Below, piece after piece: positions 3,301-40,278 of a DNA stretch of 64,000 nucleotides (positions are counted from its first letter, which is position 1; each line of letters opens with the position of its first letter). The notes under the pieces were generated by a model. The model worked only from the letters and a program-made list of their open reading frames with translations. It was not told where the DNA came from and made no database searches. This DNA is from Vitrella brassicaformis CCMP3155. Taxonomy: Eukaryota > Protista > Chromerida. The DNA lies in NCBI GenBank assembly GCA_001179505.1, contig CDMY01000290.1:1-64000 (forward strand), in the 5' to 3' direction. Position numbers and translations under genes: made by a program.

Positions 3301-5071
3301 CCGCACGCCGCTCTGATGCTCCGATCTCTTCTTGTGGAACGTCTTCCGTATGTGCGCGATGGCGGCCTTTTTGGCCTCCTCGTAGCCAAGCTGGTCAACG
3401 GAGAAGGACTTGTACCTCCTGCTGTCGTCCACCTGCCAGTCAGCTTTCCATGCGTTGAATGTCTTGTTGTAGTTGACGCCCCGCACGCCGCTCTGGTGCT
3501 CCGATCGCCCCCTGACCGCCGCCTGGCCGGTGCGCTCCATCTTGCGACGATGCCGCTCGGCCAACGCCTGGCGCACACATGACACACATGAAAGGATGAT
3601 AGGTGCCAGGAACAAATGCTTCTATGCTTTCTTTTGCTGCACCTTCGCTTTGTCGAATCCGTGATGTTTCATGTAGAAGCACTTGATCTTTGACTTGCCG
3701 TCGCCCGTGTCGTACCAAGTCGCCGCCCAGGCCTGGCACTTCTCAGACCAGGATACCCCACTCACGTCTGACTGATACCTGCCCTCCCTGGCGTTGGACT
3801 TCTCATCCACTGTTGAAGTCGGTGCTCTCTCGTGGGCTGGGGGCCTGCTGCCGAGTGGGTGTGTGTGGCGATCCTCCAGTGACCGGCTGCGATCGACCGA
3901 CTTGTCATGGGCGGGGCCTCCCTGCTGCGCTTCCTTACCGGCCCTCGCAGAGGAGCGGAGCCTGTGACTGTGACTGTGACGATGCTTGGCGTGCTTCCTG
4001 GCTGGCACGAGACCTGAGAGGGCAACGCAGGCCGGATACGATGAATGTGTGTCGGTCGATGATTCGGCTGATATGGTTGTCACATGCAGGTACGTACCTT
4101 TGTCGTGGGGTGACTCATCGTGAGGTGGCTCAGCCGCCCCACCGACAGCAGCAGCAGGAGATGTTGTCGAGGGACCGGGTGCACTGTCGGAGGCGGAGTA
4201 AGGCACACTACTCAATCCTGCACATATGGGAAAACAACACACGATGTGCTTCGAAGTCCCCCAGCCTTCTTTGCTCCCTCTTTCCTGTCTCACTTGCAGG
4301 TCTCCACTGTGTGACGGTCCGCTCGAGGCCATCGATGACATCAGACACACTCTCGAAGCGATCGTCACTGTCTGCCGTGCCGTTGCGGACAGCCACCAAG
4401 AGGTCGCTCAGCATGCTCACGTCCCACCCCCTCCCGCCGTGATCACGGCTGACAACCCCCCGCACCCACACCGGAGGCCGATTGTCCCCATAGCCCCGCC
4501 ATGCCGTCACCTTAAACGTCACCATAAACCGCTGACCGTTGCCCTCGTCGGCCACGCTGAAGTCTGGCAGGTGTTTGTTGAGGTAATCGGGAATGACTTT
4601 GTTGCGCAGCACGTCCCGTAAGAGCTCCGGTTGACCGCTTGACGTCCGCTGCCTGTTGCCGGCAGGTGCGGGAGACCCCTCGCGTGACACATGCTTCCTC
4701 TCCCGATCGGCGCCTGCTTGGTCGGTGCTGTCGCGGGGTGGTCCTGGTCCTGGTCCTGGTGCTGGTGGGCCTGGGGGTGCGTATGAGTGGGCGCCTGTCT
4801 CGTGCTGGTCGTCGGGGGCCATTGGCTGATCCTCTTGCTGCTGCTCGTCATTCTGGTGCTGCGGGCTCACTCCACCTGCATCGACCGCGCCGGCTACGTC
4901 TGCTTCTGCCTGCTCCTCCTCCATCGGGTGGTCCACTTGCTGCTCTATCAGCTGGGCCTGTTGCTGTGCTGTCTGGTCCACTGCCGGTGGCTGGGGCGAT
5001 GAGGGTATGAGTGGCGGAGGGCGGGGATGCAGAGGTGGAACGGGTGCTGGTGGGGGATGCGGCGCAGCCAT
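346..5071 (-). pseudogene. Multi-AP2 (ApiAP2) paralog, probably disrupted: 5 canonical AP2 domains, AP2-like+SANT-like module, remnant SAM-like tail
   Basis: ATG at 5071 (cacacaATGG). AP2 motifs such as HQSGVRGVYYNERCKSWVASWQEAGKQKRKAFSVKQLGYEEAKEAAIAHRRKMER at about 3790-3535, 3500-3350, 3320-3160, 2270-2040 and 2000-1830. G6 at 2798-2803 versus G7 in paralogs (31.26, 37.85, 40.31 kb) shifts the frame. A second 1-nt loss near 783 gives a stop at 771. Confidence 0.78.
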
Positions 5072-24780: not shown

Positions 24781-26428
24781 TCATTGGTCTTGTCGGCTGA
24801 TGGTGCGGCGGATGAACGACTTGGCGACTGCCACGTCAGATATGCCCCCGAAGACGGCCTCTCGGGCCGCATCGATCAGCGCCGCCTCCACCCGCCCCTC
24901 ATCAGACCCATCGCTGTCTTGGGGCGGCTCCACCAGCAGTGACATGCTCATGCCTGATATGCCATACTGCACACACAGCACAGACATTGACACGTGCTGT
25001 GTGTGTTGTGTGTGGACTCACCTCTTTGATTTTGTCGATGACGTGCTGTAGTTTTCCGCCGTGGCGCTGCTTCTTGTCGGCGGCCATCATGTCCATCTCA
25101 CGCTCGATGGCCGACACCAGACGTGCTGAGTCCCACAGCTGGCCGGCAGCCAGGCCTCCCTCACCCCTCACACCATCGCCAGGTGGCCACTGGACGGCCC
25201 CCCGTCGCTTGAGTGCCCGCAGGAAGCGCCGCAGCTGCGCAATGATGACGAGTGCGATGCCCGTGTGCAGGCCGAGGTCGCGGCCGATGTCCTCACCCGC
25301 CGCCACACCGTCAATGTCATCCAACATGTCCAGCAAACTCACCGCTGCGCCGACCCGTAACGCCTACACACACAGAAGGGAAGACGACACACATACGTTT
25401 AAGTCAGCCTGCCTTCACATGTGTGTGGTGTGCTGACCATGATGTTGTCGGCTACGTGTCGCATGTCGGGTGATGGGTGGGCCTTGAGCAGCTCCACCAG
25501 CTGAACCTTTGTCAACTCATCGAACGGAATCATCTCGCCCTCCCTCTCGCCATTGCCATCGCCATGCCCACCAGCCCGTCCTTCGTGCGTCGTCCCATCC
25601 GCCATGCGATCGGCCGTGCTCGGATCTCGTGCCTGCATCACATTGGGTGCGTGTGGGCCATTCACGGGCTGATAAGATGGCGGCCGCATCGTCATGTCGA
25701 TGTCGGCCAGCTCGCCAGCACTCGGCAGCTGCTCGTCATCTGCCGCCTTGAGCGGCTTGGGCAGGGCTGGTGTGGTGTGCTGCTGATTGGTCTTCTGAAG
25801 CTGTTTGATGAATCGACTGGCGGCCTCCTTGATGTCCTCGCCGTTGCGCTGCCCCACCATGCCCGGCAGCTCACGGCGCACAAACGAGTCGATGGAGGCA
25901 AAACTCAGAGAGGGGACGGCCGCCAGCATCGCCCCAATGTTGTCTCCCACTTGACCATACACACGACAGAGGACCATCCGCTGGGCGTGTGTCATGGGCT
26001 GCTGGTCCTCAGTGCCGTCCATGTCCATCTCCTGCTGGCGGCATGCCCAAGCGGCATCGATGGCCGCCCCCATGGCCTCCCTGGTGGCCGCTGAGAGGGG
26101 CACCGACTGCACTGGCGTGCCAGGCAGGACCACCTCCACGGCCAGCTGGGTCAGGGCAGACCCACTCCTGAACCGCAGACACAGAGGCGTGTCGGGATGG
26201 GCTCGGCCGAGTGCCTCCAGCTGCTGGTAGAAGTGGCGAATCAGATGCCCCCTCTGGACCGGCGTCACACGAGGGCCGCGACTGGCCGTGTGGTCCGTCG
26301 GCGGCGTAGCCGGAGGGTTCTTCTGCAGCCAACTGGGGGCCTCGATGTCCGGCGAGGAATTGCGGTGAAGGCGATTGTCCCTTCGGGGCGGCGGTTGATT
26401 GGTGTCAGGGCGAGCACTGCGGTCGATT
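24781..26428 (-). CDS. 3' end of the intact multi-AP2 gene: AP2-like+SANT-like module followed by two SAM-like domains
   Basis: Open spliced frame with introns from 25437 and near 25020-24970. FDELTKVQLVELL...DNIM|ALRVGAAVSLLDML...EDIGRDLGLHTGIALVIIAQLRRF, then LWDSARLV...QHVIDKIKE|YGISGMSMSLL. Stop TGA at 24781-24783. Confidence 0.8.
25827..26428. repeat. 602-bp sequence identical to 33457-34058, each copy flush with a gap
   Basis: Base-by-base comparison by eye found no differences. One copy ends at the gap at 26429 and the other starts after the gap ending at 33456. Confidence 0.9.
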
Positions 26429-26728
26429 NNNNNNNNNNNNNNNNNNNNNNNNNNNNNNNNNNNNNNNNNNNNNNNNNNNNNNNNNNNNNNNNNNNNNNNN
26501 NNNNNNNNNNNNNNNNNNNNNNNNNNNNNNNNNNNNNNNNNNNNNNNNNNNNNNNNNNNNNNNNNNNNNNNNNNNNNNNNNNNNNNNNNNNNNNNNNNNN
26601 NNNNNNNNNNNNNNNNNNNNNNNNNNNNNNNNNNNNNNNNNNNNNNNNNNNNNNNNNNNNNNNNNNNNNNNNNNNNNNNNNNNNNNNNNNNNNNNNNNNN
26701 NNNNNNNNNNNNNNNNNNNNNNNNNNNN
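26429..26728. other. Assembly gap (300 N)
   Basis: N run. Confidence 0.98.
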
Positions 26729-27675
26729 ATGGCCGTTAGTATCCATATTATCACTCGCTCCATCACACGGCGTTCTGGCAGCGTGTGCGCGAATACACCG
26801 ACCGCATCACATCTTCTTGTCTCCTGTCTGTCTGTCTGTCTATCAGTTTGTATGTCCATGCCATGTGCCACTCACTGCTTCAATCCCGACATGTGTCTGT
26901 CAAGACAAAACGAACAGATACATAGATACCCCACCCCGTGCCGAACCGGTCAACTCAGCCGTGAGTAAAGCCGTATCGTATGCACCGCCACACGGCCAAA
27001 AAAGAGGAGAAAAAACAAAGGGAAGTCATCACACACAGGGACCTAGGTCGTTGGCGCCCATGGCCAGCTGCTCGATGGTACGTACACCGATAAACGAACA
27101 GCCACACAAGGACGCCAAAAGACACACACACACCAAGGGCAGTCTCTACTGTACCATTGACTTACTGACTCACATCAACATCATCAGCATGCCATGGCCG
27201 TCCCACCACTCAAAACACAACATATCGACTCGACGATGCTTGCATCCGAACGACGGTGTGCGATAGCAAAAAAGATGAAAAAAGTGCGGGTATTTCTCGC
27301 ATATGGCCGGAAAAACGAATGTGAGGCATTGGCGAATGCATGCAATCCAAAGCAAGCATCACCAACCTGACCTGGTATCTGTCAATGGTCTTTACTTCAA
27401 AAAGGCATTCAGGGGGGTACCACACCGACACACCGACCCAAGATCCCGGCCAGGCCAGCCGACACCACGAGTGAGTACATAAAGGCAGCGCACCCCACCG
27501 CACCCAGCTCGATCACACAACTCAGTCAGTGGGTATGTTATGAGGCCCCATCGTCAGTCAACCGACACACACACCTTACTCCATGCATCCCCTCTCCGAC
27601 CTCAGACACACCAGACAGCAGACTCACCTCCCTCGCTGCACGAATGAATTACATCCCCGCCTGTCATTCGTCCAT

Positions 27676-28354
27676 TCATTTGAGCTTCTGCGTGACGAGG
27701 CACTCCATCACGCCCGCCTCCTCGAGGGACTGCGCATGGTCGTCCAGCGGCTTGGGAGGGAAAGCCGCCGACGAGAAGAGCCGGAAGCTGGCCACACCGA
27801 TGTTGCTCGCCTTGGCGGCCGCCGCGTACAGCTCCTTGACGGGCATGGCGTTGTTGAAGGTCAGCTTCACCTGGTCGCCCGTGTGCAGCCGCAGCGTCAC
27901 CTGCAATCAAGGTCATCACAAAGGGCACCGTTGGGTGCCAAGTGTGTGAGTGGGCACACACTGACCTTGGTGGTGGGCTTGTCAGTGTCGATGGGGGGGC
28001 TGTAGTCGTGGTCTTTGGCGGTGTTGGGGGCGTGGGGCGGCGGGGCGTGCGATGGCTCAGATAAAGTGTGGCCGCCACCAGTGAACAGCTGCTGAGGCGC
28101 GTACTTCTCAACCAACTGAAACACACACACACTCACACACGGTTGGCCACAGAGGCTGCATGTCTGTGTGAGTGTGGTGTGCTGACCATGATGTTCTCGG
28201 CAACCTGCCGCATGTCGGGTGATGGGTGGGCCTTGAGCAGCTCCACCAGCTGACCCTTCGTCAGCTCATCGAACGGAATCATCTCGCTCTCCCTCTCGCC
28301 ATTGCCGTCGCCATGCCCGCAAGCCCGTCGTCCGTGCGTCGCCCCGTCCAGCAT
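27676..28354 (-). CDS. SAM N-half + SHP box + UBX domain (p47/Shp1/UBXN2-like C-terminus), in frame with the upstream AP2 array but behind a TAA
   Basis: Exons 28354-28187, 28115-27966 and 27900-27676 are joined by phase-0 GT-AG introns. FTGGGHTL fits the SHP consensus FxGxGxxL. IDTDKPTTK|VTLRLHTGDQVKLTFNN...FPPKPLDDHAQSLEEAGVMECLVTQKL is UBX with the FPPK loop. Confidence 0.82.
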
Positions 28355-28378
28355 GCGAAGGGCAGCGGCCGGATCTCT

Positions 28379-31300
28379 TTATGCATCGGGGGTCACATCA
28401 GGTGTGTGCGGGCCATTGGCTGGCAAGGGGGACTGCGTCTGCGGGACCACATCGGCCAAGTCTCGACTCATGGGCTGCGGCGTCACGTCGATATCGAGTG
28501 GCTCATTGCCACCCGGCAGCTGCTCGGCGTCCACCGCTTCGAGCCGCTCGGACATGGCTGATGCCAGCCGGTGGCCCTTCTGGCGCTTGACTCGCCTGTC
28601 CACTGCCTGGCCGGTGCTCTCCATCTCGAGACGATGCTGCTCAGCCAACGCCTGGGGCAAAGAGAGAGAGAGACGGAAAGCGAATGGTCCATAAGCACCT
28701 TTGCTTAAGGCCATGTAGGTCTTGCGTACCTTTGCTTTGACGAAGCCGTGCTCTCCGACTGTGAATTGCTTTTTCCTCTGCCTGGTGCCGTCCTTCGGAT
28801 ACCATGACGCCGTCCACGCCCGGAATTTCCCATCCCAGGAGACGCCCACGACCTTTGACTGATGCTCGGCACGTCTGCGGATGGCGGCCGTCTTCCCCTT
28901 GGTGGCCTCGGCTGTCTTGCCGCCCTTGGGTCTCTGTCGCCTCTCGACGGCGGATGGGCTGCTGCTGGCGGATGGGTCTCTGGAGAGGTGCTTGAGAGAC
29001 GAAGTGCGATTGACAGACTTATCACACTGGCCGCCCTCTTGCCTGTCGCTGCCGAAGAGGGTCGAGTGCCTCTCCTCCATCGCACGGCGGTGCGCGATCG
29101 CGGCCTGTTTGGCAGGCTCGTAGGCGAGCTCTTTGACGGAGAAGTACTTGCTCTTCGTTTTGCCCCCCACCTGCCATTTGGCCACCCAGCGCTTCCTTCT
29201 CTCGTCGAAGTTGACGCCCCGCACGCCGCTCTGATGCTCACATGGTTTCTGCTCCATCACGGCCCGTTTGTGAGGGGTGGCGGCAGCCATAGCAGCCAGC
29301 CTGGTGTTCTGCTGATTGGTCTTCTGAAGCTGTTTGATGAATCGACTGGCGGCTTCCTTGATGTCCTCGCCGTCACGCCGCCCCACCATGGCCGGCAGCT
29401 CACGGCGCACAAACGAGTCGACGGACGCAAAGCTCAGAGAGGGGACGGCCGCCAGCATCGCCCCACAGTTGTGACCCACTTGACCATAAAGGCGACAGAG
29501 GATCATCCGCTGGGCGTGTGTCATGGGCTGCTGGTCCTCAGTGCCATCCATGTCCATCTCCCGCTGGCGGCATGCCCATGCGGCATCGACGGCCGCCCCC
29601 ATGGCCTCCCTGGTGGCCGCTGAGAGGGGCACCGACTGCACTGGGGTGCCGGGCAGGACCACCTCGACGGCCAGCTGGGTCAGGGCAGACCCACTCCTGA
29701 ACCGCAGACACAGAGGCGTGTCGGGATGGGCTCGGCCGAGTGCCTCCAGCTGCTGGTAGAAGTGGAGAATCAGATGCCCCTGCTGGACCGGGGACACACG
29801 AGGGCCGCGACTGGCCGTGTGATGCGTCGGCGGCGTAGCCGGTGGGCCCTCCCGCAGCCAACTGGGGGCCTCGATGTCAGGTGAGGGATGGCGGTCGAAT
29901 CGGTCGTCTCTGCGGGGCCTCGGTCGGTTGGTGTCACGGCGAGCCGTAGGGTGCAGAGGCACACCGCCCCCCACACCACCGTCACGCAGCTGAGGGGCCT
30001 GCGGCCGCCCCCTGACCGCTGCCCGGCCGGTGCGCTCCATCTCGAGACGGTGCTGCTCGGCCAACGCCTGAAACACGTGACAGACACAACGAGGGCTGGC
30101 GGTGTTGGGCTGCGCGAGCGGGGTGGCGCTGTGCTGTACCTTTGCTTTGTCGAAGCCGTGATGTTTGACGTAGAAATACTTCTTCTTCTGCTTGCCGTCG
30201 CCCTTGTCGTACCAAGTCGCCACCCAATACTGGTACTTCTCAGACCAGCAAACCCCCGGCACGTCGGACTGATGCTCCGCAGGTTTGCGGATGACGGCCT
30301 CGCCCTTGGCCTCGCCCTTGGCCTTGGCTGCCTTGTCACTGTTGGGGCTCGGCCGCCATTCCGCCACGGAAGGGCTGCTGCTGGCGAGAGCCGCATGTCG
30401 GCGGCGGTGCTTTCGAGGGGGGCTGTGGTCGATGACTGATCACGAATCGAACCCTCTGGCACCGACGCACCAGCCCCTTGCTGCTGTCGGTCAGCATCAT
30501 CTCGGTCCGCACATTTTGCCTGCGCCACCAGGCTGGCTGCCAGAGAATGGCCGCCCGCCTCACTCAGCCTCGCCGACACACACCGATCCCTCCCCCCACC
30601 CGCGTCCTCACGATGGCGCTTGGCTGCTGGCCGGTTGATGAGCAGCTCGTTCTCGGAGCTGGACGAGTCCGTTATAAGCCTCTCACTGACACGAGATGAC
30701 GACCTGCCTCTGTGGCGGCGGCGAGGCTGAATGTGGGGCGGCATGAGGTCATTGTTGTCGAGTGGATGGCCACTGGGGCACTCAGACAGAGACGGGGGCG
30801 GCATGGGCTTGGGCCTGGCTCTGCTGCTGCGGTGGCGCGTCTGAGGACGATTGCAGCCGTGGGGGCTGATGTCATCGAGCCAGCTGATGTCCAGGGGTGC
30901 AGCGGCCTCTCCCTCACTGACAGTGCTCAAACGGTTGAGCTCCTCGACAGCGCGGCGAAAAGCGGCGATGACGGCCGAACGGGAGCTGAGGTCGACCACC
31001 GGGACATCGAGAATGCGGTCCTCGCCATCTTCCCCCTCGGGGGACGGCAGACGGACACGGAAGCCGCCGTCCTGCCAACACAACCCGCATGACCTGCGCG
31101 AAAGAAAGAGCCAACCCCCCACACACATCACACACGTGACAAATCTGGCCCTCCCTGGTCTTCCCTTGTCTTGTCTTACCCGTCGCTGCTGAGGACCTCG
31201 ACGAGGGCAGCAGCCAGGTCGCCGCCCTCCATCACACCCACACCTGGCCTGCTGCTGGGGGGGCCGTGGCGGCGCGCCGAGTGAATCGCACCATCATCAT

Positions 31301-33156
31301 TGGGGGGGCTGCAGGAACGGCCCTCATCGCTCGTCGCCCCGCCCTCTGAAGTGTGGCGCCGCTGCTCCATCTTCTGTCTGTGTGCGATGGCCGCCTGTTT
31401 GGCCTCCTCGTAGCCGAGCTCAGCGACGGAGAAGGACTTCGTCTTCTTCCTGCCGCCCACCTGCCAGCTGGCCAGCCATGAGTTGCCGCCCTTGTTGTAG
31501 CTGACGCCCCTGACGCCGCTCTGGTGCTCACATCGCTTCCTCACCGACGCCAGTCCAATACGCTCCATCTCGAGACGATGCTGCTCGGCCAACGCCTGAA
31601 CCATTCGTTAGAGAGTGAGATGGAGGTGCGGTGCTGCGATGCGATGTCGGTACCTTCGCTTTGTAGAAGCCATGCTCCTTGACGTAGAAGTACTTGTTCT
31701 CCCGCTTGCCGTCGTTCTTGCTATACCACCTCGCTTGGCAGTACTGACCCCGTTCACACCATTGGACCCCCTGCACGGCTGACTGATGCTCGGCACTTTT
31801 GCGGATGACGGTCTTGCCCTTGCCGGCCTTGCGGCTCGGCTGTCCGTCACGCGAAGACACGTCATCAGCCCAATCCATGTCGTCATCGCCACCAACACCA
31901 CCCACATCCGCCTCGCCACCGTCGTGATGTGCCGGACCCTTGGACGCCGCACCAGCACTCGTGCCTCTGTCGGCGGCATGCTTGTCCGTCGGCTGTGGCT
32001 GCAGCTTGATCCGCCGCATGTCGACCATGATTGCATCGTCGCCAGCCGCGGCGTTGCGGTGGTGCGCCGCTTGGGCGAAGGCACGCAGGATGAGCCGGGA
32101 TGAGGTCACGTCAGACACACTGAAGACACGCTCGTCGTGCCTGGCCTCCCCGTCTGGTCGGTAAGACACAAAGCTGGCCTCCTCGCCGCGCCACTCGAGA
32201 CCGAGACTGAGTGGAGCACACATCAAGGAAGAGGAGAATCCGTGGCCTATTCTATGAGACTTCATCGTTCTGCCCACCTGTCGGCATCGTCTTGGTGCGA
32301 GTCCGCCAGCTGCCGCTGTGCCTGCTCCACCAGGCTGGCTGCCAGAGCATGGCCGCCCCCTTCACTCAGCTTCGCCGACACAATTCTTTCCTTCCCACCG
32401 CCTGACCTGTCGCGACGGCGTCTGGCCCCCGGTCGATGTGACAGCTCCTCGCCCTCACGACGGCGATGTGCCTCCGATGTGGGTAGAATGGCAGGCGGCA
32501 TGAGTTCATCCTGACTGTCCCTCCTGCTGCCCGGGCGATGGCTGGGCTCCCCACTCCCCAGACAGGCCATCGGCCTCTCACTGACACGATGTGCAGACCT
32601 GCCTCTGTGGCGGCGCCGGCGCTGAATGTGGGGCGGGCATGGGGTCATCATTGTCAGGTGTGTGGTCACTGGGGCCCTCAGACAGAGACGGGGGCGGCAT
32701 GGGCTTGCGCCTCGCTCTGCTGCTGCGGCGGAGCGTCTGAGGACGATTGCAGCCGTGGGGGCTGATGTCATCGAGCCAGCTGATGTCCAGGGGTGCAGCG
32801 GCCTCTCCCTCACTGACAGTGCTCAAACGGTTGAGCTCCTCGACAGCGCGGCGAAAAGCGGCGATGACGGCCGAACGGGAGCTGAGGTCGACCATCGGGA
32901 CATCGAGAATGCGGTCCTCGCCATCTTCCCCCTCGGAGGACGGCAGACGGACACGGAAGCCGCCGTCCTGCCAACACAACCCGCATGACCTGCGCGAAAG
33001 AAAGAGCCAACCCCCCACACACATCACACACGTGACAAATCTGGCCCTCCCTGGTCTTCCCTTGTCTTGTCTTACCCGTCGCTGCTGAGGACCTCGACGA
33101 GGGCAGCAGCCAGGTCGCCGCCCTCCATCACTCCCACACCTGGCCTGCTGCTGGGG
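28379..33156 (-). pseudogene. Multi-AP2 array segment (5 canonical AP2, 3 degenerate AP2-like, 1 AP2-like+SANT-like module) with frameshifts
   Basis: AP2s at about 31790-31560, 31530-31370, 30275-30030, 29240-29070 and 28860-28620. Relative to paralogs: +1 nt near 32636 (atgcccgcccc vs atgccgcccc), -1 nt near 30431 (tcatcgacc vs tcatccgacc), and an in-frame TAA at 28379-28381. Confidence 0.75.
30830..33156. repeat. Near-identical tandem copies of an exon-intron unit (about 30830-31260 and 32730-33156)
   Basis: The CWQDGG exon, intron and LAAALVEVLSSDG exon end are duplicated with only a few substitutions. A third, more diverged copy is at about 37450-37860. Confidence 0.9.
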
Positions 33157-33456
33157 NNNNNNNNNNNNNNNNNNNNNNNNNNNNNNNNNNNNNNNNNNNN
33201 NNNNNNNNNNNNNNNNNNNNNNNNNNNNNNNNNNNNNNNNNNNNNNNNNNNNNNNNNNNNNNNNNNNNNNNNNNNNNNNNNNNNNNNNNNNNNNNNNNNN
33301 NNNNNNNNNNNNNNNNNNNNNNNNNNNNNNNNNNNNNNNNNNNNNNNNNNNNNNNNNNNNNNNNNNNNNNNNNNNNNNNNNNNNNNNNNNNNNNNNNNNN
33401 NNNNNNNNNNNNNNNNNNNNNNNNNNNNNNNNNNNNNNNNNNNNNNNNNNNNNNNN
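33157..33456. other. Assembly gap (300 N)
   Basis: N run. Confidence 0.98.
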
Positions 33457-36400
33457 CCTTGATGTCCTCGCCGTTGCGCTGCCCCACCATGCCCGGCAGC
33501 TCACGGCGCACAAACGAGTCGATGGAGGCAAAACTCAGAGAGGGGACGGCCGCCAGCATCGCCCCAATGTTGTCTCCCACTTGACCATACACACGACAGA
33601 GGACCATCCGCTGGGCGTGTGTCATGGGCTGCTGGTCCTCAGTGCCGTCCATGTCCATCTCCTGCTGGCGGCATGCCCAAGCGGCATCGATGGCCGCCCC
33701 CATGGCCTCCCTGGTGGCCGCTGAGAGGGGCACCGACTGCACTGGCGTGCCAGGCAGGACCACCTCCACGGCCAGCTGGGTCAGGGCAGACCCACTCCTG
33801 AACCGCAGACACAGAGGCGTGTCGGGATGGGCTCGGCCGAGTGCCTCCAGCTGCTGGTAGAAGTGGCGAATCAGATGCCCCCTCTGGACCGGCGTCACAC
33901 GAGGGCCGCGACTGGCCGTGTGGTCCGTCGGCGGCGTAGCCGGAGGGTTCTTCTGCAGCCAACTGGGGGCCTCGATGTCCGGCGAGGAATTGCGGTGAAG
34001 GCGATTGTCCCTTCGGGGCGGCGGTTGATTGGTGTCAGGGCGAGCACTGCGGTCGATTTGCCCTCTGCCCCGCACACCACCGTCACGCCGCTGAGGGGCT
34101 CGATCGTCTCTCGGGCGCACAGGGCCATCGTCCCGGCCATCATCAGCACTCATCAAGTCATCCTCGGGCGTGTAGTGGCGCTGCACCATTGCGTGGCGGT
34201 GTTTGATTGCCAACGCCTGAAATAAAGAGCATTCCATGGACGGGTGCTATGTCGGTACTTCTCATCTTTGGACCTTTGCTCGGTCGAAGCCATGCTCTCT
34301 GACGGAGAAGCTCTTGCTCTTCCTTTTGCCCTCCACCTGCCAGCTGGCCTTCCATGCGTTTTTCGTCTTGTGGTAGTGGACGCCCTTGACGCCGCTCTGC
34401 TGTGCCGTTTTCTTCTTGACTGCTGCCCGGCCAATGCGCTCCATCTCACGACGATGCTGCTCGGCCAACGCCTGATGCACACGACAGACACAACGAGCGC
34501 TTGTTTTGTTGCATGACGTCAGCTGTGAGGCGCTTTGCTACACCTTTGCTTTGTCGAAGCCGTGATTCTTGACAGTGAAATACTTGCTCTTCATCATGGG
34601 GTCCCCCTTGTCGTACCAACTCGCCCTCCAGGCCTGGTCCCTCTCATACCATGAGACGCCCGACACGTCTGATCGGTGCGGGGCAGCCCTTCCTACGACG
34701 GCTGTGGCTGTCTTGCCACTGTTGGGGCTCGGCCGTCTCTCCGCTACGGATGGGCTCCTGCTGGCGAGAGATGCATCTCTCCGGCAATGCTTCCGAGATG
34801 GGCTGCGGTCGGACGACTGATCACGCACCGACAGGCCCAGCTCCTCCTTGCCCCCCTGCTGCTGTGGGTCGAGCCATGAGAGGTCGATAATGGTCGCTCG
34901 GTCGCCGAGCTGGTCACGGTGGATGGTGTTGCGGTACGCCACACACAGGCGGAGCGCATCGAGGGTGCTGTCACGGGAGTCAGGATCTTCGATGACGAAC
35001 TTGCGGAGACCCAGGTACTTGCCCTGTTTGAAGAAGTAGGCGGTGAAACGTCTCGGTGAAGCCATACAGATGCCCACCCTGATACGACATAACACAGAGG
35101 ATAATAAATGTGTCGCCTTCCCGTGTCCTGTGCGTGGCTGACCCTCCATTGGCAAGCGGACAGGCGTCGTTGAAGCGTCGTATCAGTCGGTCCGCCAGGG
35201 CTTTGGCGAGGGCAGTCCCAGTGAGCCCATCCAGGTCGGCCTCATCGCGCGCTCTCTTGCGGTCGACAGTCTTGCGCTTGGGGGCGGGGCGACGCGGCGA
35301 CCCCCTCTCTTGGTCGCTGCTGCGATGCGTCTGACGAGTGCCCGTTGAGTGGGGATGGGCGGCCACCGGGGCATTGCTGCTGTGCGTGCATTCGGGGCAG
35401 AACCACTTGCCCTTGGGGACGGCCGTCAGCTGGACGCAGTAGGTGTGGTAGGCCGCAGAGCAGCCCCCGTTGTCACACAATAGCAGAAGCTGCTCGTCGT
35501 CGCCCTTGCCGCACTTCAAACACCGCACCGAATCATCCGAATCACTCCCCGCCTCCTTAATGTCGTCGGTGCTCACCCTCTTGCGCCCTCGCCTGCCGCT
35601 GTGACGACTGGTGGACTTGGGGGGGAGGAGGCGGCGTGGCGGACTCGAGCTGCTGCTATCGCGGTAGTCGCTGTCACCCCCCTCACCACCAGACGACAGT
35701 GATGATGTTGAATAGCCCTGCCACTCCTTCTCAGACGGTGAAGCCATCTCGGCATGGCGGCTGGCCTCACTTGACCGTGGCTTGGGGCCGCGACGCCCGA
35801 CTGAAGAGAGGGACAGGGAAATGCGCCGATGGGGTGAAGAGCACTGCTGGCCATCAGACTGCTGACCCAAGTGCCGAGATGACGCCATGCTGCCGCCCCG
35901 CATATCGATGTCCTTCTCCTGTGCAGCGGGGGGCAACGGCTGAGGGCGGATAGCCTCGGGTCGACCGTGGCCGGCAGCAGAGTCGTGCGGAGAAGGTGGC
36001 TGGTGGACGGGCTGGCTGTCGCTGCCGAAGGGTGTGTAGTGCCTCTCCTCCATCGCACGGCGGTATGCGATCGCTGCCTGCTTGGCAGGCTCGTAGCCGT
36101 GCTCAGCCACGGCGAAGGACTTGCTCTTCCTCCTGCCGCCCTCACGCCATTGGGCCACCCAGCTCTTGTCTGTTTCGTTGTAGTGGACGCCTCGTACGCC
36201 GCTCTGATGCTTGGATAGTTTCTGGACGGATGCCCGACCGGTGCGCTCCATCTCGAGACGATGCTGCTCAGCCAATGCCTGACGCACACGTTTGGGGGAA
36301 CGGAGAGTGAGATAGAGGTGGGGTGCTGGAGTGACATGTCGGCACCTTTGCTTTGTGGAAGCCATGGTCCCTGACGAAGAAGTTCTTGTTCTCCTGCTTG

Positions 36401-39400
36401 CCGTCGTTCTTGCTGCCCCACTTCGCTTGCCAGTACTGACCCTGCTCAGACCAGTAGACGCCTTTCACGTCTGAGTGATGGTGGGCCCTCTGAACGAAGG
36501 TCTTCTTCTTGCCCCGGGTGGCCCTGCGCCTCGGCTGTTCGTCGGGCGACGACAACTCACCACGTCCATCCACCTCGTTATCACCACCAGCGCCGCCCAC
36601 ATCCGCCTCTCTGCCCTTATGTGCCGGACCCATGGAGGCCGTACCACTACTCGTGCCTTTGTCGGCGTCATGCTTGTCCGTCGGCTGTGGGTGCAGCTTG
36701 ATGCGCCGCACGTCGACCACGATTGCACCGTCGCCAGCCGTGGCGTTGCGGTGGTGCGCCGCTTGGGCGAAGGCACGCAGGATGAGCCGCGATGAGGTCA
36801 CGTCAGACACACTGAAGACACGCTCGTCGTGCCTGGCCTCCCCGTCTTGTCGGTAAGCCACAAAGCTGGCCTCCTCGCCGCGCCGCTCGAGACCAAGACT
36901 GAGTGAAGCACACATCAAGGAAAAGGATAATGAGTGGCCTATTCCATCCATCAGAGTGCATTCCTGCTGTCCACCTGTCGGCATCGCCTCGGTTTCCGTC
37001 CGCCAGCTGCCGCTTGGCCTGCTCCACCAGGCTGGCTGCCAGAGAATGGCCGCCCCCTTCACTCAGCCTCGCCGACACAATTCTTTCCTTCCCGCCACCC
37101 GACTGGCCACGACGGCGCTTGGCTCCCGGTCGATGTGGCAGCTGCTCGCCATCACGACGGCGATGTGCCTCCGATGTGGGTCGAACGGGAGGCGGCATGA
37201 TCTCATCCTGACTGTCCCTCCTGCTGCCCGGGCGATGGCTGGGCTCCCCACTCTCCAGACCAGACGGGTCGACCATCGGCCTCTTACTGACACGATGTGC
37301 GGACCGGCCTCTGCGACGGTGCCGATGCCGAGTATCGGATGACGCAAGGTCATTGCTGTCAAGTGTGTGGTCACTGGGGCCCTCAGACAGAGACGGGGGC
37401 GGCATGGGCTTGCGCCTCGCTCTGTTGCCACGGCGCGTCCGAGGTCGATTGCAGCCGTGGGGACCGATGTCATCGAGCCAGCTGATGTCCAGGGGTGCGG
37501 AGGCCTCTCCCTCACTAGCAGTGCTCAGACGGTTGAGCTGCTCGACGGCGCGGCGAAAAGCGTCAATGACGGCCGAACGGGAGCTGAGGTCGACCACCGG
37601 CACATCGAGAATGCGCTCAGCTGCACCCTTCCCGACAGAGGACGGCACACGGACACGGAAGCTGCCGTCCTGCCAACATAGCCCGCATGACCTGCCCGAA
37701 AGAAAGAGCCAACCCCCCACACACATCACACACGTTAATCTGGCCCTTCCTTGTCTTCCCTTGTCTTGTCTTACCCGTCGCTGCTGAGGACCTCGACGAG
37801 GGCAGCAGCCAGGTCGCCGCCCTCCATCCCACCCACACCTGAACCGCTGCTGGGGGGGCCGTGGCGGCGCGCCGAGTGAATCTCATCATCATCATCATTG
37901 TGGCGGCTGCGGGAACGGCTCTCTTCTCTCGTCGCCCCGCCCTCTGACGTGTGGCGCCGCTGCTCCATCTCCCGTCTGTGTGCGATGGCCGCCTGTTTGG
38001 CCTTCTCGTAGCCAAGCTGCTTGACGGAGAAGGACTTGCTTTTCCTACCGCCGCCCTCACGCCATTCGGCAATCCATGAGTTGCTGCTCTCGATGTACCT
38101 CACGCCCTTGACGCCGCTCTGGCCAGATCTCTGCTTGACTACTGCCCTCCCCGTACGCTCCATCTCAAGACGATGCTGCTCGGCCAACGCCTGATACACA
38201 CGGCACACATGAGAGAGATTGACGACCGCCGTTGGCGTCGCTGTTGTCAGTACCTTTGCTTTGTCGAAACCGTGATGTTTGACATAGAAGTACTTGCTCT
38301 TCATCTTGGGGTCCCCTCTCTCGTACCAAGTCGCCCTCCACGCCTTGTTCTTTTTCGCCCAGGAGACGCCACGGACGTCTGACTGGTACCTGCCCTCGCT
38401 GGCGTCGGGCGTCGGTGCTCCGTCGTGGGCTGGGGGGCAGCTGCCGAGCGGATGTGTGTGGCGCGTCTTCGGCGATGGGCTGCGATCGACGGCTGACTCC
38501 TCATCGGCGGGCCCCGCCGACGGGGTGACTCTCTCCCCGCACACAGTGGACTGACGCCGATGACCATGGCGACGTTTGGCCGACAGACCTGGAGAAAACA
38601 ATACAGACAGCCACAACTGCTGGGTGAGTGACACGCACAGGGTGGGTACCTTTGTGACGGCGTGGCTCGTTGTGAGGTGGCTCAGCCACCCCACCACCAG
38701 CAGCAGCAGGGGGCATACACGAGGGGCCGGGGGCACCGATGGGTAGCGCGTCGGTGGCGCGGCCAGGAGCGCCGCTCGACTCTGCACACACGAAAAGACA
38801 GCAGCACGCACACAATGATATGCATCAAAGTCCCCCAGCCTCCTGTCATCCCGACCATGTAATGGCCTGCCTCTGCGGCCCTTGGGCTCAACGCGGGGCG
38901 GCATGGGGTCACGCTTGTCAAGTGGCGGCGGCATGGACCTGTGGCGCTCGAGAGGTGAATTGCCATCCACTGCTGCCCCTCGCTGCGCCTCCTCGAGCCA
39001 CGAGAGGTCGATGAGCACCGCCTGGTCGCCCAGACGCGAGCTGTGCAGGGCGTTGCGATACTCGACGGCTTGGCGGAAGGCCGTGAAGATGGCCTCACGG
39101 GAAGTGACGTCCTCACCAACACCGAACTGACGAAGATCCACAGCGGCTGCAGCCTGGCTGTCCCAGAAGTAGCCCTCGAATACACAGGTTGCCCGCCATG
39201 AGACGCCGACACTAACACACACACATATCCAGAGACGAGTCGCTTATGACATCCGGCCGTTCATTGTCGCTGCGAGTCGTCCTCCCTCGCTTACCCTCCG
39301 TTGTTGAGGCAGAGTGAGTGGACATTTGGCTGCTCCTGACGCAGCCGCCGCATCAGTCCACGACCCAAAGCGTCGCCCGTCAGCCCGCCCAGATCGTAGC

Positions 39401-39978
39401 GGTCAGACGAAGGCGAGAGGCCGCCATCCTCCTCGTCCATCCGCCGCTGCTTGTTGCCTGGGCTGCCGGTGCGGCCCTCGAGTGAGCCACTGCTGTCGCT
39501 GCCGCTCGACGGAGGCGCCCCTCTCTCGAATGGGGAGTGCCGCTGCTCCATCAAGGCCCGTTTGTGCCGGGTGGCGGTATCCGTAACAGCCTCGTAGCCC
39601 AGCCTGGTGTGCTGCCGATTGGTCTTCTGAAGCTGTTTGATGAATCGACTGGCGGCCTCCTTGATGTCCTCGCCGTCACGCTGCCCCACCATGGCCGGCA
39701 GCTCGTGACGCACAAACGAGTCGATGGACGCAAAGCTCAGAGAGGGGACGGCCGCCAGCATCGCCCCAATGTTGTGACCCACTTGACCATACTCGCGACA
39801 GAGGACCATCCGCTGGGCGTGTGTCATGGGCTGCTGGTCCTCAGTGCCGTCCATGTCCATCTCCTGCTGGCGGCATGCCCAAGCGGCATCGATGGCCGCC
39901 CCCATGGCCTCCCTGGTGGCCGCTGAGAGGGGCACCGACTGCACTGGGGTGCCGGGCAGGACCACCTCCACGGCCAGC
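33457..39978 (-). CDS. Central part of an intact multi-domain ApiAP2 protein: 6 canonical AP2, 4 degenerate AP2-like modules, PHD finger, 2 AP2-like+SANT-like modules (5' end in gap)
   Basis: All exon junctions I traced are GT-AG and phase-compatible, with no stops or frameshifts. AP2s at about 38380-38160, 38125-37960, 36480-36250, 36210-36050, 34680-34440 and 34400-34190. Confidence 0.85.
35388..35522 (-). other. PHD finger (C4HC3) inside the AP2 gene
   Basis: CLKCGKGDDEQLLLLCDNGGCSAAYHTYCVQLTAVPKGKWFCPEC. Confidence 0.95.
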
Positions 39979-40278
39979 NNNNNNNNNNNNNNNNNNNNNN
40001 NNNNNNNNNNNNNNNNNNNNNNNNNNNNNNNNNNNNNNNNNNNNNNNNNNNNNNNNNNNNNNNNNNNNNNNNNNNNNNNNNNNNNNNNNNNNNNNNNNNN
40101 NNNNNNNNNNNNNNNNNNNNNNNNNNNNNNNNNNNNNNNNNNNNNNNNNNNNNNNNNNNNNNNNNNNNNNNNNNNNNNNNNNNNNNNNNNNNNNNNNNNN
40201 NNNNNNNNNNNNNNNNNNNNNNNNNNNNNNNNNNNNNNNNNNNNNNNNNNNNNNNNNNNNNNNNNNNNNNNNNNNNNN
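39979..40278. other. Assembly gap (300 N)
   Basis: N run. Confidence 0.98.

What the first reader, a model, noticed from the sequence alone, without database searches (positions are those of the whole stretch)
27676..28400. An AP2 paralog has swapped its SAM tail for p47-type SHP+UBX exons (Cdc48/p97 recruitment)
Seen: the exon ending ...IPFDELTKGQLVELLKAHPSPDMRQVAENIM| is the paralog of the SAM N-half at 25530-25438 and uses the same phase-0 donor. Here it splices to LVEKYAPQQLFTGGGHTLS (SHP) and a complete UBX exon instead of the SAM C-half. Both new exons are open with canonical splice sites. A single in-frame TAA (28379-28381) separates this from the AP2 array, and an ATG follows at 28354. 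Known: SHP+UBX are the two p97/Cdc48-binding elements of p47/Shp1. Inference: exon capture produced an AP2-UBX fusion, a DNA-targeted segregase adaptor. It is now either split by a recent stop, read through, or expressed as a small SAM-N/SHP/UBX protein.
Basis: partly seen in the sequence, partly recalled or inferred. Interest (0 to 1): 0.8.

Follow-up and report, generated by a model that had tools for sequence, protein, structure and literature searches.

The report
AP2 gene copy with borrowed UBX tail
In the alga Vitrella brassicaformis, a copy of an AP2 DNA-binding gene has had its own tail replaced by the last two exons (Cdc48/p97-docking SHP box and UBX domain) of a thioredoxin-UBX gene; it is a clear young case of exon shuffling, but this copy carries a stop codon in front of the new tail and I found no RNA that uses the new splice junction.

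Summary
The window is Vitrella brassicaformis CCMP3155 scaffold CDMY01000290.1, positions 1-64000. The exons, GT..AG introns, TAA (28379-28381) and ATG (28354) are as described. They match the public model CEL99839.1 (180 aa, 'UBX domain-containing protein').

- **Exon capture is real.** Window 28147-27323 is an 0.84-kb copy (89%) of the 3' end of the thioredoxin-SHP-UBX gene CEL98395.1 on another scaffold, not of a p47 gene. It runs from the end of that gene's intron 4 through the SHP exon, the next intron and the UBX exon into its 3'UTR.
- **The frame is kept.** The joint lies inside two phase-0 introns.
- **A second copy exists.** It lies at 108.4-110.9 kb of the same scaffold, is 90.5% identical, and reads through CGA where this copy has TAA. 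So the stop is derived. That copy has its own TAG further upstream.
- **Indels suggest past selection on the frame.** All coding indels between the two copies are multiples of three, and the tail exons have none.
- **RNA shows only the parent.** The one RNA run laid carries these exons only in the parent (thioredoxin) form, at high depth. No 28187|28115 junction was seen.
- **'SAM' is not supported** by Pfam or Foldseek.

This scan had already noted the same chimera on the paralogous copy.

The parts
28382..30367 (-). Last long open stretch of the annotated 1197-aa AP2 gene (record 32501-28379), with three AP2-domain matches
   Evidence: Pfam AP2 at 3.8e-29 with 3 stretches. The annotated gene ends at 28379.
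28379..28381 (-). In-frame TAA between the AP2 array and the tail. It is specific to this copy.
   Evidence: Sequence. The window reads GCA TAA AGA GAT where the paralog L003 reads GCA CGA GAT and neighbour copy 1 reads GCA CGA GAT. The stop was not independently verified in reads.
28352..28354 (-). First ATG after the TAA; annotated start of CEL99839.1 (180 aa)
28187..28378 (-).
   Evidence: 84.7% nt identity to 25420-25662. Alignment A3. Two helices in the model, pLDDT about 72.
28116..28186 (-). Chimeric intron 1 (71 nt, GT..AG). The 5' end resembles the AP2-tail intron. The last ~30 nt, including a (GT)n run, resemble intron 4 of the thioredoxin-UBX parent.
   Evidence: DNA contigs of runs X2 and X3 span 28080-28226.
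27966..28115 (-). SHP exon. It starts with LVEKYAPQQ, the remnant of the parent's last thioredoxin helix.
   Evidence: 96% identical to the parent exon and 98% to the paralogous chimera. The parent transcript L001 joins thioredoxin to it exactly at 28116/28115.
28062..28085 (-). SHP-box motif FTGGGHTL (F-x-G-x-G-x-x-L)
   Evidence: Sequence. It matches the family consensus F-x-G-x-G-x-x-L-G in alignments A2 and A4.
27901..27965 (-). Intron 2 (65 nt, GT..AG)
   Evidence: The same intron is removed in the RNA contig of X12, but that contig is the parent form.
27676..27900 (-). UBX exon (74 codons) plus TGA stop
   Evidence: Pfam UBX 23.5 bits against cut-off 21. Model pLDDT about 95, with Foldseek matches 9v9o, 7r7s, 1s3s and 8hrz. 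The strand-1 Arg and the FPPK loop align with p47 and PUX5.
27323..27675 (-). 3'UTR carried over from the parent gene
   Evidence: L004 10569-11405 matches window 28147-27323 at 89%. Per-segment identity is 89.7%. X12 holds window-type contigs at 27443-27563 and 27567-27710 at depth 8.
27115..27326 (-). Flank resembling the DNA just downstream of another AP2-tail paralog (P0002). It marks the 3' edge of the replacement.
   Evidence: 84% identity to L003 13646-13854, which lies 130-340 nt past the P0002 stop.
24781..25363 (-). For comparison: the tail C-half exons that the neighbouring copy (P0003) keeps and this copy has lost
   Evidence: P0003 is 100% identical to the window. Exon coordinates.

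Best explanation
This is a young DNA-level chimera that is now probably decaying.

**How it formed.** In a member of Vitrella's large, recombining AP2 gene family, a stretch was replaced by an 0.84-kb piece of the thioredoxin-SHP-UBX gene CEL98395.1. The replaced stretch ran from the intron after the first tail exon to about 130 nt past the stop. The inserted piece holds the last ~30 nt of the parent's intron 4, the SHP exon, the next intron, the UBX exon and ~355 nt of 3'UTR. Both broken introns are phase 0. Splicing from the AP2 tail donor to the parent's acceptor therefore gives one frame: AP2 domains, two-helix remnant, SHP box, UBX. The chimera was later duplicated on the same scaffold.

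**What the original product would do (inferred).** It would be an AP2 DNA-binding protein that docks through SHP and UBX on the N domain of Cdc48/p97.

**State of this copy.** A three-letter-longer change created a TAA in front of the tail, so the AP2 protein ends there. The SHP-UBX exons then lie in a spliced region downstream of the stop. They could be translated only from the internal ATG at 28354, which is the annotated 180-aa model. I take that model to be a by-product of the gene predictor splitting the gene at the stop.

**Shown:** donor gene, breakpoints, frame, second copy, derived stop, intact UBX fold.
**Inferred:** Cdc48 binding, past function, present lack of translation.
For: - **Organism and annotation:**
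- **Parent gene and its transcript.** L001 has a thioredoxin domain (Pfam 2e-28) joined to LVEKY exactly at the acceptor. L001 is 99.5-100% identical to L004, the locus of CEL98395.1, with four introns removed.
- **Limits of homology.** L004 10569-11405 matches window 28147-27323. There is no thioredoxin exon anywhere in the 64-kb window. The 3' flank resembles the DNA downstream of AP2 paralog P0002.
- **Second chimera.** Window 29999-26729 matches L003 20116-23452 at 90.5%. It is annotated as the 735-aa AP2+UBX protein P0290 and reads CGA where the window has TAA.
- **Frame kept.** Between the two copies, all 5 coding indels are multiples of 3 and there are none in the 564 nt of tail exons. 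The ~1150 nt of non-coding sequence holds 12 indels, mostly not multiples of 3.
- **UBX intact:**
- **Related architectures.** The nearest relative outside Vitrella is Chromera Cvel_621, which is thioredoxin+UBX. Most of the remaining top hits are SEP-UBX (p47) proteins.
- **RNA.** The X12 contig (depth 185) splices intron 2 but is the parent form at 15 of 15 sites. No 28115|28187 joint appears in any run. X12 depth is 0 at 28328-28518.
Against: - dN/dS between the two chimeric copies is high: AP2 0.60, tail exon 0.83, SHP 0.62, UBX 0.48. Constraint is therefore weak or recently lost, and gene conversion from the parent could mimic conservation of the tail exons.
- Window-type 3'UTR contigs occur in the RNA run at depth ~8, so the locus is not silent.
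- Logan contigs drop rare variants, so a missing junction is not evidence of absence.
- The TAA could not be checked in reads. The reference differs from the read contigs at 28425, 28053, 28033, 27727, 27724 and 27712, so a consensus error at the stop is not excluded.
- The gene models were built with Augustus using RNA-seq intron hints (PMC4501334). I could not see whether this intron had a hint.
Confidence: 0.6

Rival explanations
1. The annotated 180-aa protein (two-helix remnant + SHP + UBX, CEL99839.1) is really made from its own start at 28354. It would act as a small Cdc48/p97 cofactor or competitor.
For: The reading frame is open, both introns are canonical, and the UBX fold and SHP motif are intact. 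Window-type 3'UTR contigs are present in the RNA run X12 at depth ~8. It is the public gene model.
Against: Only 24 nt separate the upstream gene's stop from this ATG, so a promoter would have to lie inside the AP2 coding sequence. X12 has depth 0 over 28328-28518, which holds the ATG. No transcript contig carries exactly this product (one search found only the genome record). On the paralog the predictor made the same kind of split at another in-frame stop.
Confidence: 0.15
2. A full AP2-SHP-UBX fusion is still made from this locus, because the TAA is a reference error, a strain polymorphism, or is read through.
For: The paralog and the neighbouring copy are open at this point. The reference disagrees with the read contigs at several nearby positions. 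The tail exons carry no indels.
Against: No indel or other letter was reported at 28379-28381 in X2-X4, although the bin has depth 21-112. TAA followed by A is a strong terminator in most eukaryotes (general knowledge). The window lineage has the most amino-acid changes in SHP+UBX: 6 non-synonymous and 5 synonymous.
Confidence: 0.12
3. The chimera never made a useful protein. It is a by-product of rampant recombination in the AP2 cluster, copied once more and drifting.
For: Both chimeric copies carry an in-frame stop upstream of the tail: TAA here, and TAG inside an AP2 domain in the paralog. dN/dS is 0.5-0.8. No RNA shows the junction. The locus is a mosaic of repeats and gaps.
Against: All five coding indels are in frame, and the 564 nt of tail exons have none, where about 6 would be expected at the non-coding rate. 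The splice sites, the SHP motif and the UBX contact residues are kept in both copies.
Confidence: 0.1
4. The joint is an assembly artefact that pastes the parent's exons onto an AP2 contig.
For: The scaffold has 300-N gaps. 25827-26428 is 100% identical to 33457-34058 at gap edges. A (GT)n run lies at the joint.
Against: The same joint occurs in two diverged copies (90.5%) on the scaffold. Contigs of runs X2 and X3, from two studies, span 28080-28226. The exons differ from the parent at about 5% of sites.
Confidence: 0.03

Closest known systems
Thioredoxin-SHP-UBX proteins (V. brassicaformis CEL98395.1; Chromera velia Cvel_621)
   Same: This is the source of the captured DNA. The SHP exon, intron, UBX exon and 3'UTR are 90-96% identical to CEL98395.1. 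Cvel_621 is the best hit outside Vitrella: 48% identity and the same LVEK.APQQLF.G.G..L junction.
   Different: The window has no thioredoxin exon. An AP2 array and a two-helix remnant sit upstream instead.
p47/NSFL1C, yeast Shp1, plant PUX3-5 (SEP-SHP-UBX cofactors of p97/Cdc48)
   Same: Same bipartite SHP box followed about 30 residues later by UBX. These are the closest solved structures (9v9o PUX5, and 1s3s, 7r7s and 8hrz p47). 67 of the 98 top relatives carry SEP.
   Different: There is no SEP or UBA domain here or in the parent. It is not a copy of a p47 gene.
ApiAP2 transcription factors, the Vitrella-specific cluster of about 50 paralogs (Woo et al. 2015, PMC4501334)
   Same: The upstream ORF has AP2 domains and belongs to the recently duplicated family.
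   Different: No described ApiAP2 carries SHP or UBX. A full-text search for Vitrella, ApiAP2 and UBX found no paper holding all three terms.
Chromatin-directed Cdc48/p97 recruiters such as SPRTN/Wss1 (SHP or VIM motifs) and Ubx5/UBXN7 (own knowledge, not tested here)
   Same: They bring the segregase to DNA-bound targets through short p97-binding modules.
   Different: Those recognise ubiquitin, SUMO or DNA lesions. Here the module would be wired directly to a sequence-specific DNA-binding array.
Classical chimeric genes formed by exon shuffling, for example Drosophila jingwei (own knowledge)
   Same: Both are a young fusion of a duplicated gene piece with the exons of another gene, joined in introns.
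   Different: This one arose by DNA-level replacement with the introns kept, not by retroposition.

Membership tests
UBX domain (PF00789) | Profile match above the curated cut-off | tested here: met
   23.5 bits against cut-off 21 for window:27679-27906.
UBX domain (PF00789) | Beta-grasp fold superposable on UBX domains solved in complex with p97/Cdc48 N | tested here: met
   Model pLDDT is about 95 over residues 100-180. Foldseek gives 9v9o at E 3e-8 and rmsd 1.5 A, then 7r7s, 1s3s and 8hrz.
UBX domain (PF00789) | Conserved Arg in strand 1 and the F-P-x loop that contact the p97 N domain | tested here: met
   VTLRLHTG and AFPPKPL align with IQIRLADG and TFPNKEL of p47, and with GFPPKQL of PUX5. 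Actual binding was not tested.
SHP box (binding site 1 motif) | F-x-G-x-G-x-x-L about 30 residues before the UBX | tested here: met
   FTGGGHTL at 28085-28062. The column consensus is F.G.G..LG in A2 and A4.
p47/Shp1/PUX3-5 family | SEP domain before SHP-UBX | tested here: not met
   No SEP hit in the window exons, in P0037 or in the parent. SEP is present in 67 of 98 relatives.
Thioredoxin-SHP-UBX family | Thioredoxin domain with CGPC spliced to the SHP exon | tested here: not met
   tblastn of the parent's thioredoxin part against the whole window gives only chance hits.
ApiAP2 | AP2 domain in the same polypeptide as the tail | tested here: not met
   AP2 domains end upstream of the in-frame TAA in this copy. 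The feature is met in the paralog P0290, downstream of its own TAG.
SAM domain | Profile or fold match to SAM for the intact paralogous tail | tested here: inconclusive
   Pfam shows no SAM and the PDB sequence search finds nothing. The single-sequence model (pLDDT 74) has five helices. Foldseek has no match at E <= 0.001. VIA-wide lists many SAM domains, but only at Z 4.2-5.3, below what can be trusted for helical bundles.
Expressed chimeric gene | RNA spanning the new junction 28187|28115 | tested here: inconclusive
   No such joint appears in X2, X3, X4 or X12. Only contigs could be laid, not reads, and only X12 behaves as RNA.

The most novel reading that the evidence does not exclude
AP2-SHP-UBX proteins are really made in Vitrella, from the paralog at 108-111 kb, or here if the TAA is a polymorphism or is read through. 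They would tether Cdc48/p97 to specific DNA sites, or make the factor its own segregase client. That would be a sequence-specific transcription factor hard-wired to an unfoldase, an arrangement not described in any eukaryote.
Probability: 0.15. Interest if true: 0.75.

Novelty: new variant of a known kind. Interest (0 to 1): 0.4.

Why it matters
This is a fully traceable, very young exon-shuffling event. The donor gene, both breakpoints, the matching intron phases and a second copy are all identified. It lies in the lineage-specific AP2 expansion of a close free-living relative of apicomplexan parasites, and shows how that family tries out new effector tails.

If a fused protein is made, it would be the first sequence-specific DNA-binding factor carrying its own Cdc48/p97 docking module. 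As it stands, this copy looks like a failed or failing trial.

The parent, a thioredoxin carrying a p47-type SHP-UBX tail, is shared with Chromera and scattered across other eukaryotes. It is itself an undescribed kind of Cdc48 cofactor and may deserve more attention than the chimera.

Tried and rejected
1. **Word search with the UBX exon.** It found only a 74-aa fragment, P0017, which nevertheless led to transcript L001.
2. **Word search with the thioredoxin+SHP frame.** It missed the Vitrella parent, because that protein's 90% cluster is represented by the 74-aa fragment, outside the length range. The cluster look-up recovered it.
3. **Two scans of metagenome contigs.** One used a 44-mer of the SHP exon. 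The other used a gapped pattern matching both forms of the TAA site. Both found nothing. The first 44-mer is present in L001, so that collection does not hold the sample, and the blanks mean nothing.
4. **A thioredoxin exon hidden upstream in the window** was rejected.
5. **A short intron removing the TAA** was rejected. No plausible donor-acceptor pair with a pyrimidine-rich end exists, and the homologous stretch is coding in the paralogs.
6. **Misassembly** was rejected.
7. **The many skip joints of about 1.27-1.8 kb between 26841-26848 and 28116-28658** have sides of at most 22 nt. Most lie on GT/CA and GTCT repeats, so I treat them as repeat artefacts.
8. **SAM identity** was not established by Pfam, the PDB sequence search or Foldseek; VIA gives only weak hits.
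9. **dN/dS on 124 codons** is underpowered.
10. **I could not obtain reads**, only contigs, so the junction, the TAA and the transcript's 5' end remain untested.
Full report
**What the window is.**
- The 662-aa AP2 ORF finds only Vitrella brassicaformis CCMP3155 proteins.
- The annotated protein P0003 matches window 26415-25438 and 25363-25019 at 99-100%.
- Fetching the contig of P0037 shows that window coordinates equal those of scaffold CDMY01000290.1, positions 1-64000.
- The annotated genes on the minus strand are:
  - an AP2 gene of 1197 aa (32501-28379);
  - a 180-aa 'UBX domain-containing protein' (28354-27676; CEL99839.1 = P0037);
  - the 515-aa P0003 (26807-24781).

- Reading the minus strand gives these features:
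  - a tail exon ending ...AENIM at 28187;
  - intron 1 at 28186-28116 (GT..AG, with a GT-rich run before TTTCAG);
  - the SHP exon at 28115-27966;
  - intron 2 at 27965-27901;
  - the UBX exon at 27900-27679, then TGA;
  - an in-frame TAA at 28379-28381;
  - the next ATG at 28354.
- Spliced, this is exactly P0037.
- Pfam scores the last exon as UBX above the curated cut-off.
- The model built on 52 relatives has pLDDT of about 95 over the UBX. It superposes best on PUX5 SHP+UBX bound to CDC48A-N and on p47 UBX bound to p97.
- The strand-1 Arg and the FPPK loop align with p47 and PUX5.
- FTGGGHTL fits the SHP consensus seen in the family alignments.
- The tail exon is 84.7% identical to its counterpart in the neighbouring copy and uses the same phase-0 donor. 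In the neighbour that donor is spliced to ALRVGAAV... in the annotation.

**Where the SHP+UBX exons came from.**
- The only database protein close to the UBX exon was a 74-aa fragment on a 2-kb JGI transcript contig, L001.
- In L001 the LVEKYAPQQ...SHP exon is preceded by a complete thioredoxin domain with CGPC (Pfam 2e-28), not by the AP2 tail. Similarity to the window starts exactly at the acceptor 28116/28115.
- The cluster look-up shows that the fragment belongs with CEL98395.1 (P0291), a 223-aa thioredoxin-SHP-UBX protein of the same strain on scaffold CDMY01000269.1.
- L001 is that gene's transcript: 99.5-100% identity, four introns removed and the last one retained.
- Genomic homology runs from L004 10569 to 11405, matching window 28147-27323 at 89%. 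This covers the last ~30 nt of the parent's intron 4, both exons, the intron between them and ~355 nt of 3'UTR.
- No thioredoxin exon exists anywhere in the window.
- Beyond 27323 the window resembles the DNA just downstream of another AP2-tail paralog, P0002.
- So the segment from mid-intron to just past the stop of an AP2-tail gene was replaced by the parent's 3' end.
- Both introns are phase 0: ATG|GT in the AP2 gene and AAG|GT in the parent. That is why the frame is kept.
- In the parent locus the thioredoxin-UBX gene lies tail to tail with an AP2-tail gene, P0001. The two partners were therefore already neighbours.

**Relatives of the module.**
- An exhaustive search with residues 57-180 of P0037 gives the following, in order of score:
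  - the parent cluster;
  - Chromera velia Cvel_621, 230 aa, thioredoxin+UBX, 48% identity;
  - mostly SEP-UBX (p47-type) proteins.
- Of the 98 top hits scanned, all have UBX, 67 have SEP and 7 have thioredoxin.
- 'p47-type SHP+UBX' is therefore right as a description of the module. It is wrong as a statement of origin, and the p47 family test fails on SEP.

**A second copy, and the age of the stop.**
- The same scaffold holds a second chimera at 108.4-110.9 kb on the plus strand. Window 29999-26729 is 90.5% identical to L003 20116-23452.
- It is annotated as the 735-aa P0290 (CEL99864.1): two AP2 domains, tail remnant, SHP and UBX.
- At the stop site the window reads GCA TAA AGA GAT. Both the second chimera and the neighbouring copy 1 read GCA CGA GAT. 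The TAA is therefore a derived change, three letters longer, found only in this copy.
- The second copy is not pristine either. It has an in-frame TAG inside an AP2 domain (FSVK*LGFEEAK), and P0290 merely starts at the next ATG. Both annotated starts are thus products of a predictor splitting a long frame at a stop.

**Signs of selection.**
- Between the two chimeras, exon identity is 93-98%. Intron identity is 83-88% and the parent-derived 3'UTR is 91%.
- All five indels in coding sequence are multiples of three. The 564 nt of tail exons have none.
- About 1150 nt of non-coding sequence have twelve indels, mostly not multiples of three. At that rate about six would be expected in the tail exons.
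- Against this, dN/dS is 0.5-0.8. The window lineage has the most amino-acid changes in SHP+UBX: 6 non-synonymous and 5 synonymous. The parent has 3 and 6. These counts are small.
- Gene conversion from the expressed parent could also keep the exons clean.
- I read this as a frame that was under selection after the capture, with constraint now weak.

**RNA.**
- Only Logan contigs could be laid, in one call.
- X2-X4 behave as DNA: their contigs reach 35-225 kb and cover the introns. In X2 and X3, contigs span 28080-28226, so the joint exists in DNA reads of two studies.
- X12 behaves as RNA. A 599-nt contig at depth 185 skips intron 2 and runs on, unlike the window, beyond 28117.
- At all 15 listed differences that contig carries the parent's letters, including the seven where the second chimera agrees with the window. 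The abundant message through these exons is therefore the thioredoxin-UBX mRNA.
- No joint 28115|28187 was reported in any run, and X12 depth is 0 over 28328-28518.
- Two window-type 3'UTR contigs (27443-27563 and 27567-27710, no differences) occur in X12 at depth ~8. The locus may therefore be transcribed at a few percent of the parent's level.
- Contigs drop rare variants, so absence is not shown.
- The TAA itself was not contradicted, but I could not confirm that a contig covers it. The reference disagrees with all laid contigs at 28425, 28053, 28033, 27727, 27724 and 27712. That leaves room for a consensus error.

**The 'SAM' label.**
- Pfam finds no SAM in either half of the tail. A PDB sequence search finds nothing.
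- A single-sequence model of the intact paralogous tail has five helices at pLDDT 74.
- Foldseek gives no match at E <= 0.001.
- The wide VIA search lists many SAM domains, but only at Z 4.2-5.3, which the tool itself says is not trustworthy for helical bundles.
- 'SAM-like' is a lead only. Just the first two helices remain in the chimera, and the second runs on into the LVEK remnant of the thioredoxin helix.

**Assembly caveats.**
- The scaffold has 300-N gaps at 26429-26728, 33157-33456 and 39979-40278.
- 25827-26428 is 100% identical to 33457-34058 at gap edges. The order of pieces, and any giant single gene across 24781-39978, is therefore doubtful.
- The chimeric joint itself lies inside one contig (26729-33156).

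**Verdict.**
- The stop is recent and specific to this copy.
- Function as a DNA-targeted Cdc48 adaptor is plausible for the ancestral chimera but untested.
- This copy is most likely a truncated AP2 gene with an untranslated UBX tail.
- The scan had already noted the same chimera on the paralog beyond the window's end.

Noticed in passing
L003 19958-19960 (CDMY01000290.1 108429-108431): The paralogous chimera has an in-frame TAG inside an AP2 domain (FSVK*LGFEEAK). The annotated 735-aa AP2-UBX protein simply starts at the next ATG, 16 codons on.
   Followed up: yes
L004 10001-11040 (CDMY01000269.1 91992-93031); proteins P0291, P0138, P0248, P0200, P0239: A thioredoxin (CGPC) fused to a p47-type SHP box and UBX occurs in several places. 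It is an expressed gene in Vitrella. It is also present in Chromera (Cvel_621), Bradysia flies (named thioredoxin-like protein 1), the green alga Apatococcus, and, with a SEP domain, in a flatworm. I found no paper describing this kind of Cdc48 cofactor.
   Followed up: partly
window 25827-26428 and 33457-34058: These two stretches are 100% identical over 602 nt, and each abuts a 300-N gap. This looks like overlapping contig ends, so the scaffold order in the AP2 cluster may be wrong.
   Followed up: partly
window 28425, 28053, 28033, 27727, 27724, 27712: All contigs laid from runs X2-X4 (and X12, except at 28425, which it does not cover) carry a different letter from the reference at these places. 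Where checked, that letter is the one shared by the paralogs. The reference consensus may be imperfect in this repeat.
   Followed up: no
L001 1695-2035 against 1-1131: The transcript contig joins the thioredoxin-UBX mRNA to the spliced tail of the convergent AP2 gene P0001 on the other strand. Either the two 3' ends overlap or an unstranded assembly merged them. The last intron of the thioredoxin-UBX gene is retained in this contig but removed in the X12 contig.
   Followed up: no
window 28116-28186 against L003 intron and L004 10544-10598: The middle of intron 1 differs between the two chimeras. The window's ACCACACTCACACAGAC resembles the parent intron. The paralog's middle resembles the AP2-tail intron. 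Both share the TGTGGCCAAC joint. Possible causes are later conversion, a 10-nt deletion, or chance in CA-rich sequence.
   Followed up: partly
runs X5, X9, X13, X14, X16: Marine sediment metagenomes from 2023-2025 hold up to 55% of the sampled words of window 27500-28500. Near-identical Vitrella DNA, including this locus, seems to occur in the environment.
   Followed up: no
window 380-4688: Another AP2-tail paralog sits at the very start of the scaffold. It is 83-90% identical to 24842-26419, and it keeps its own tail C-half.
   Followed up: no
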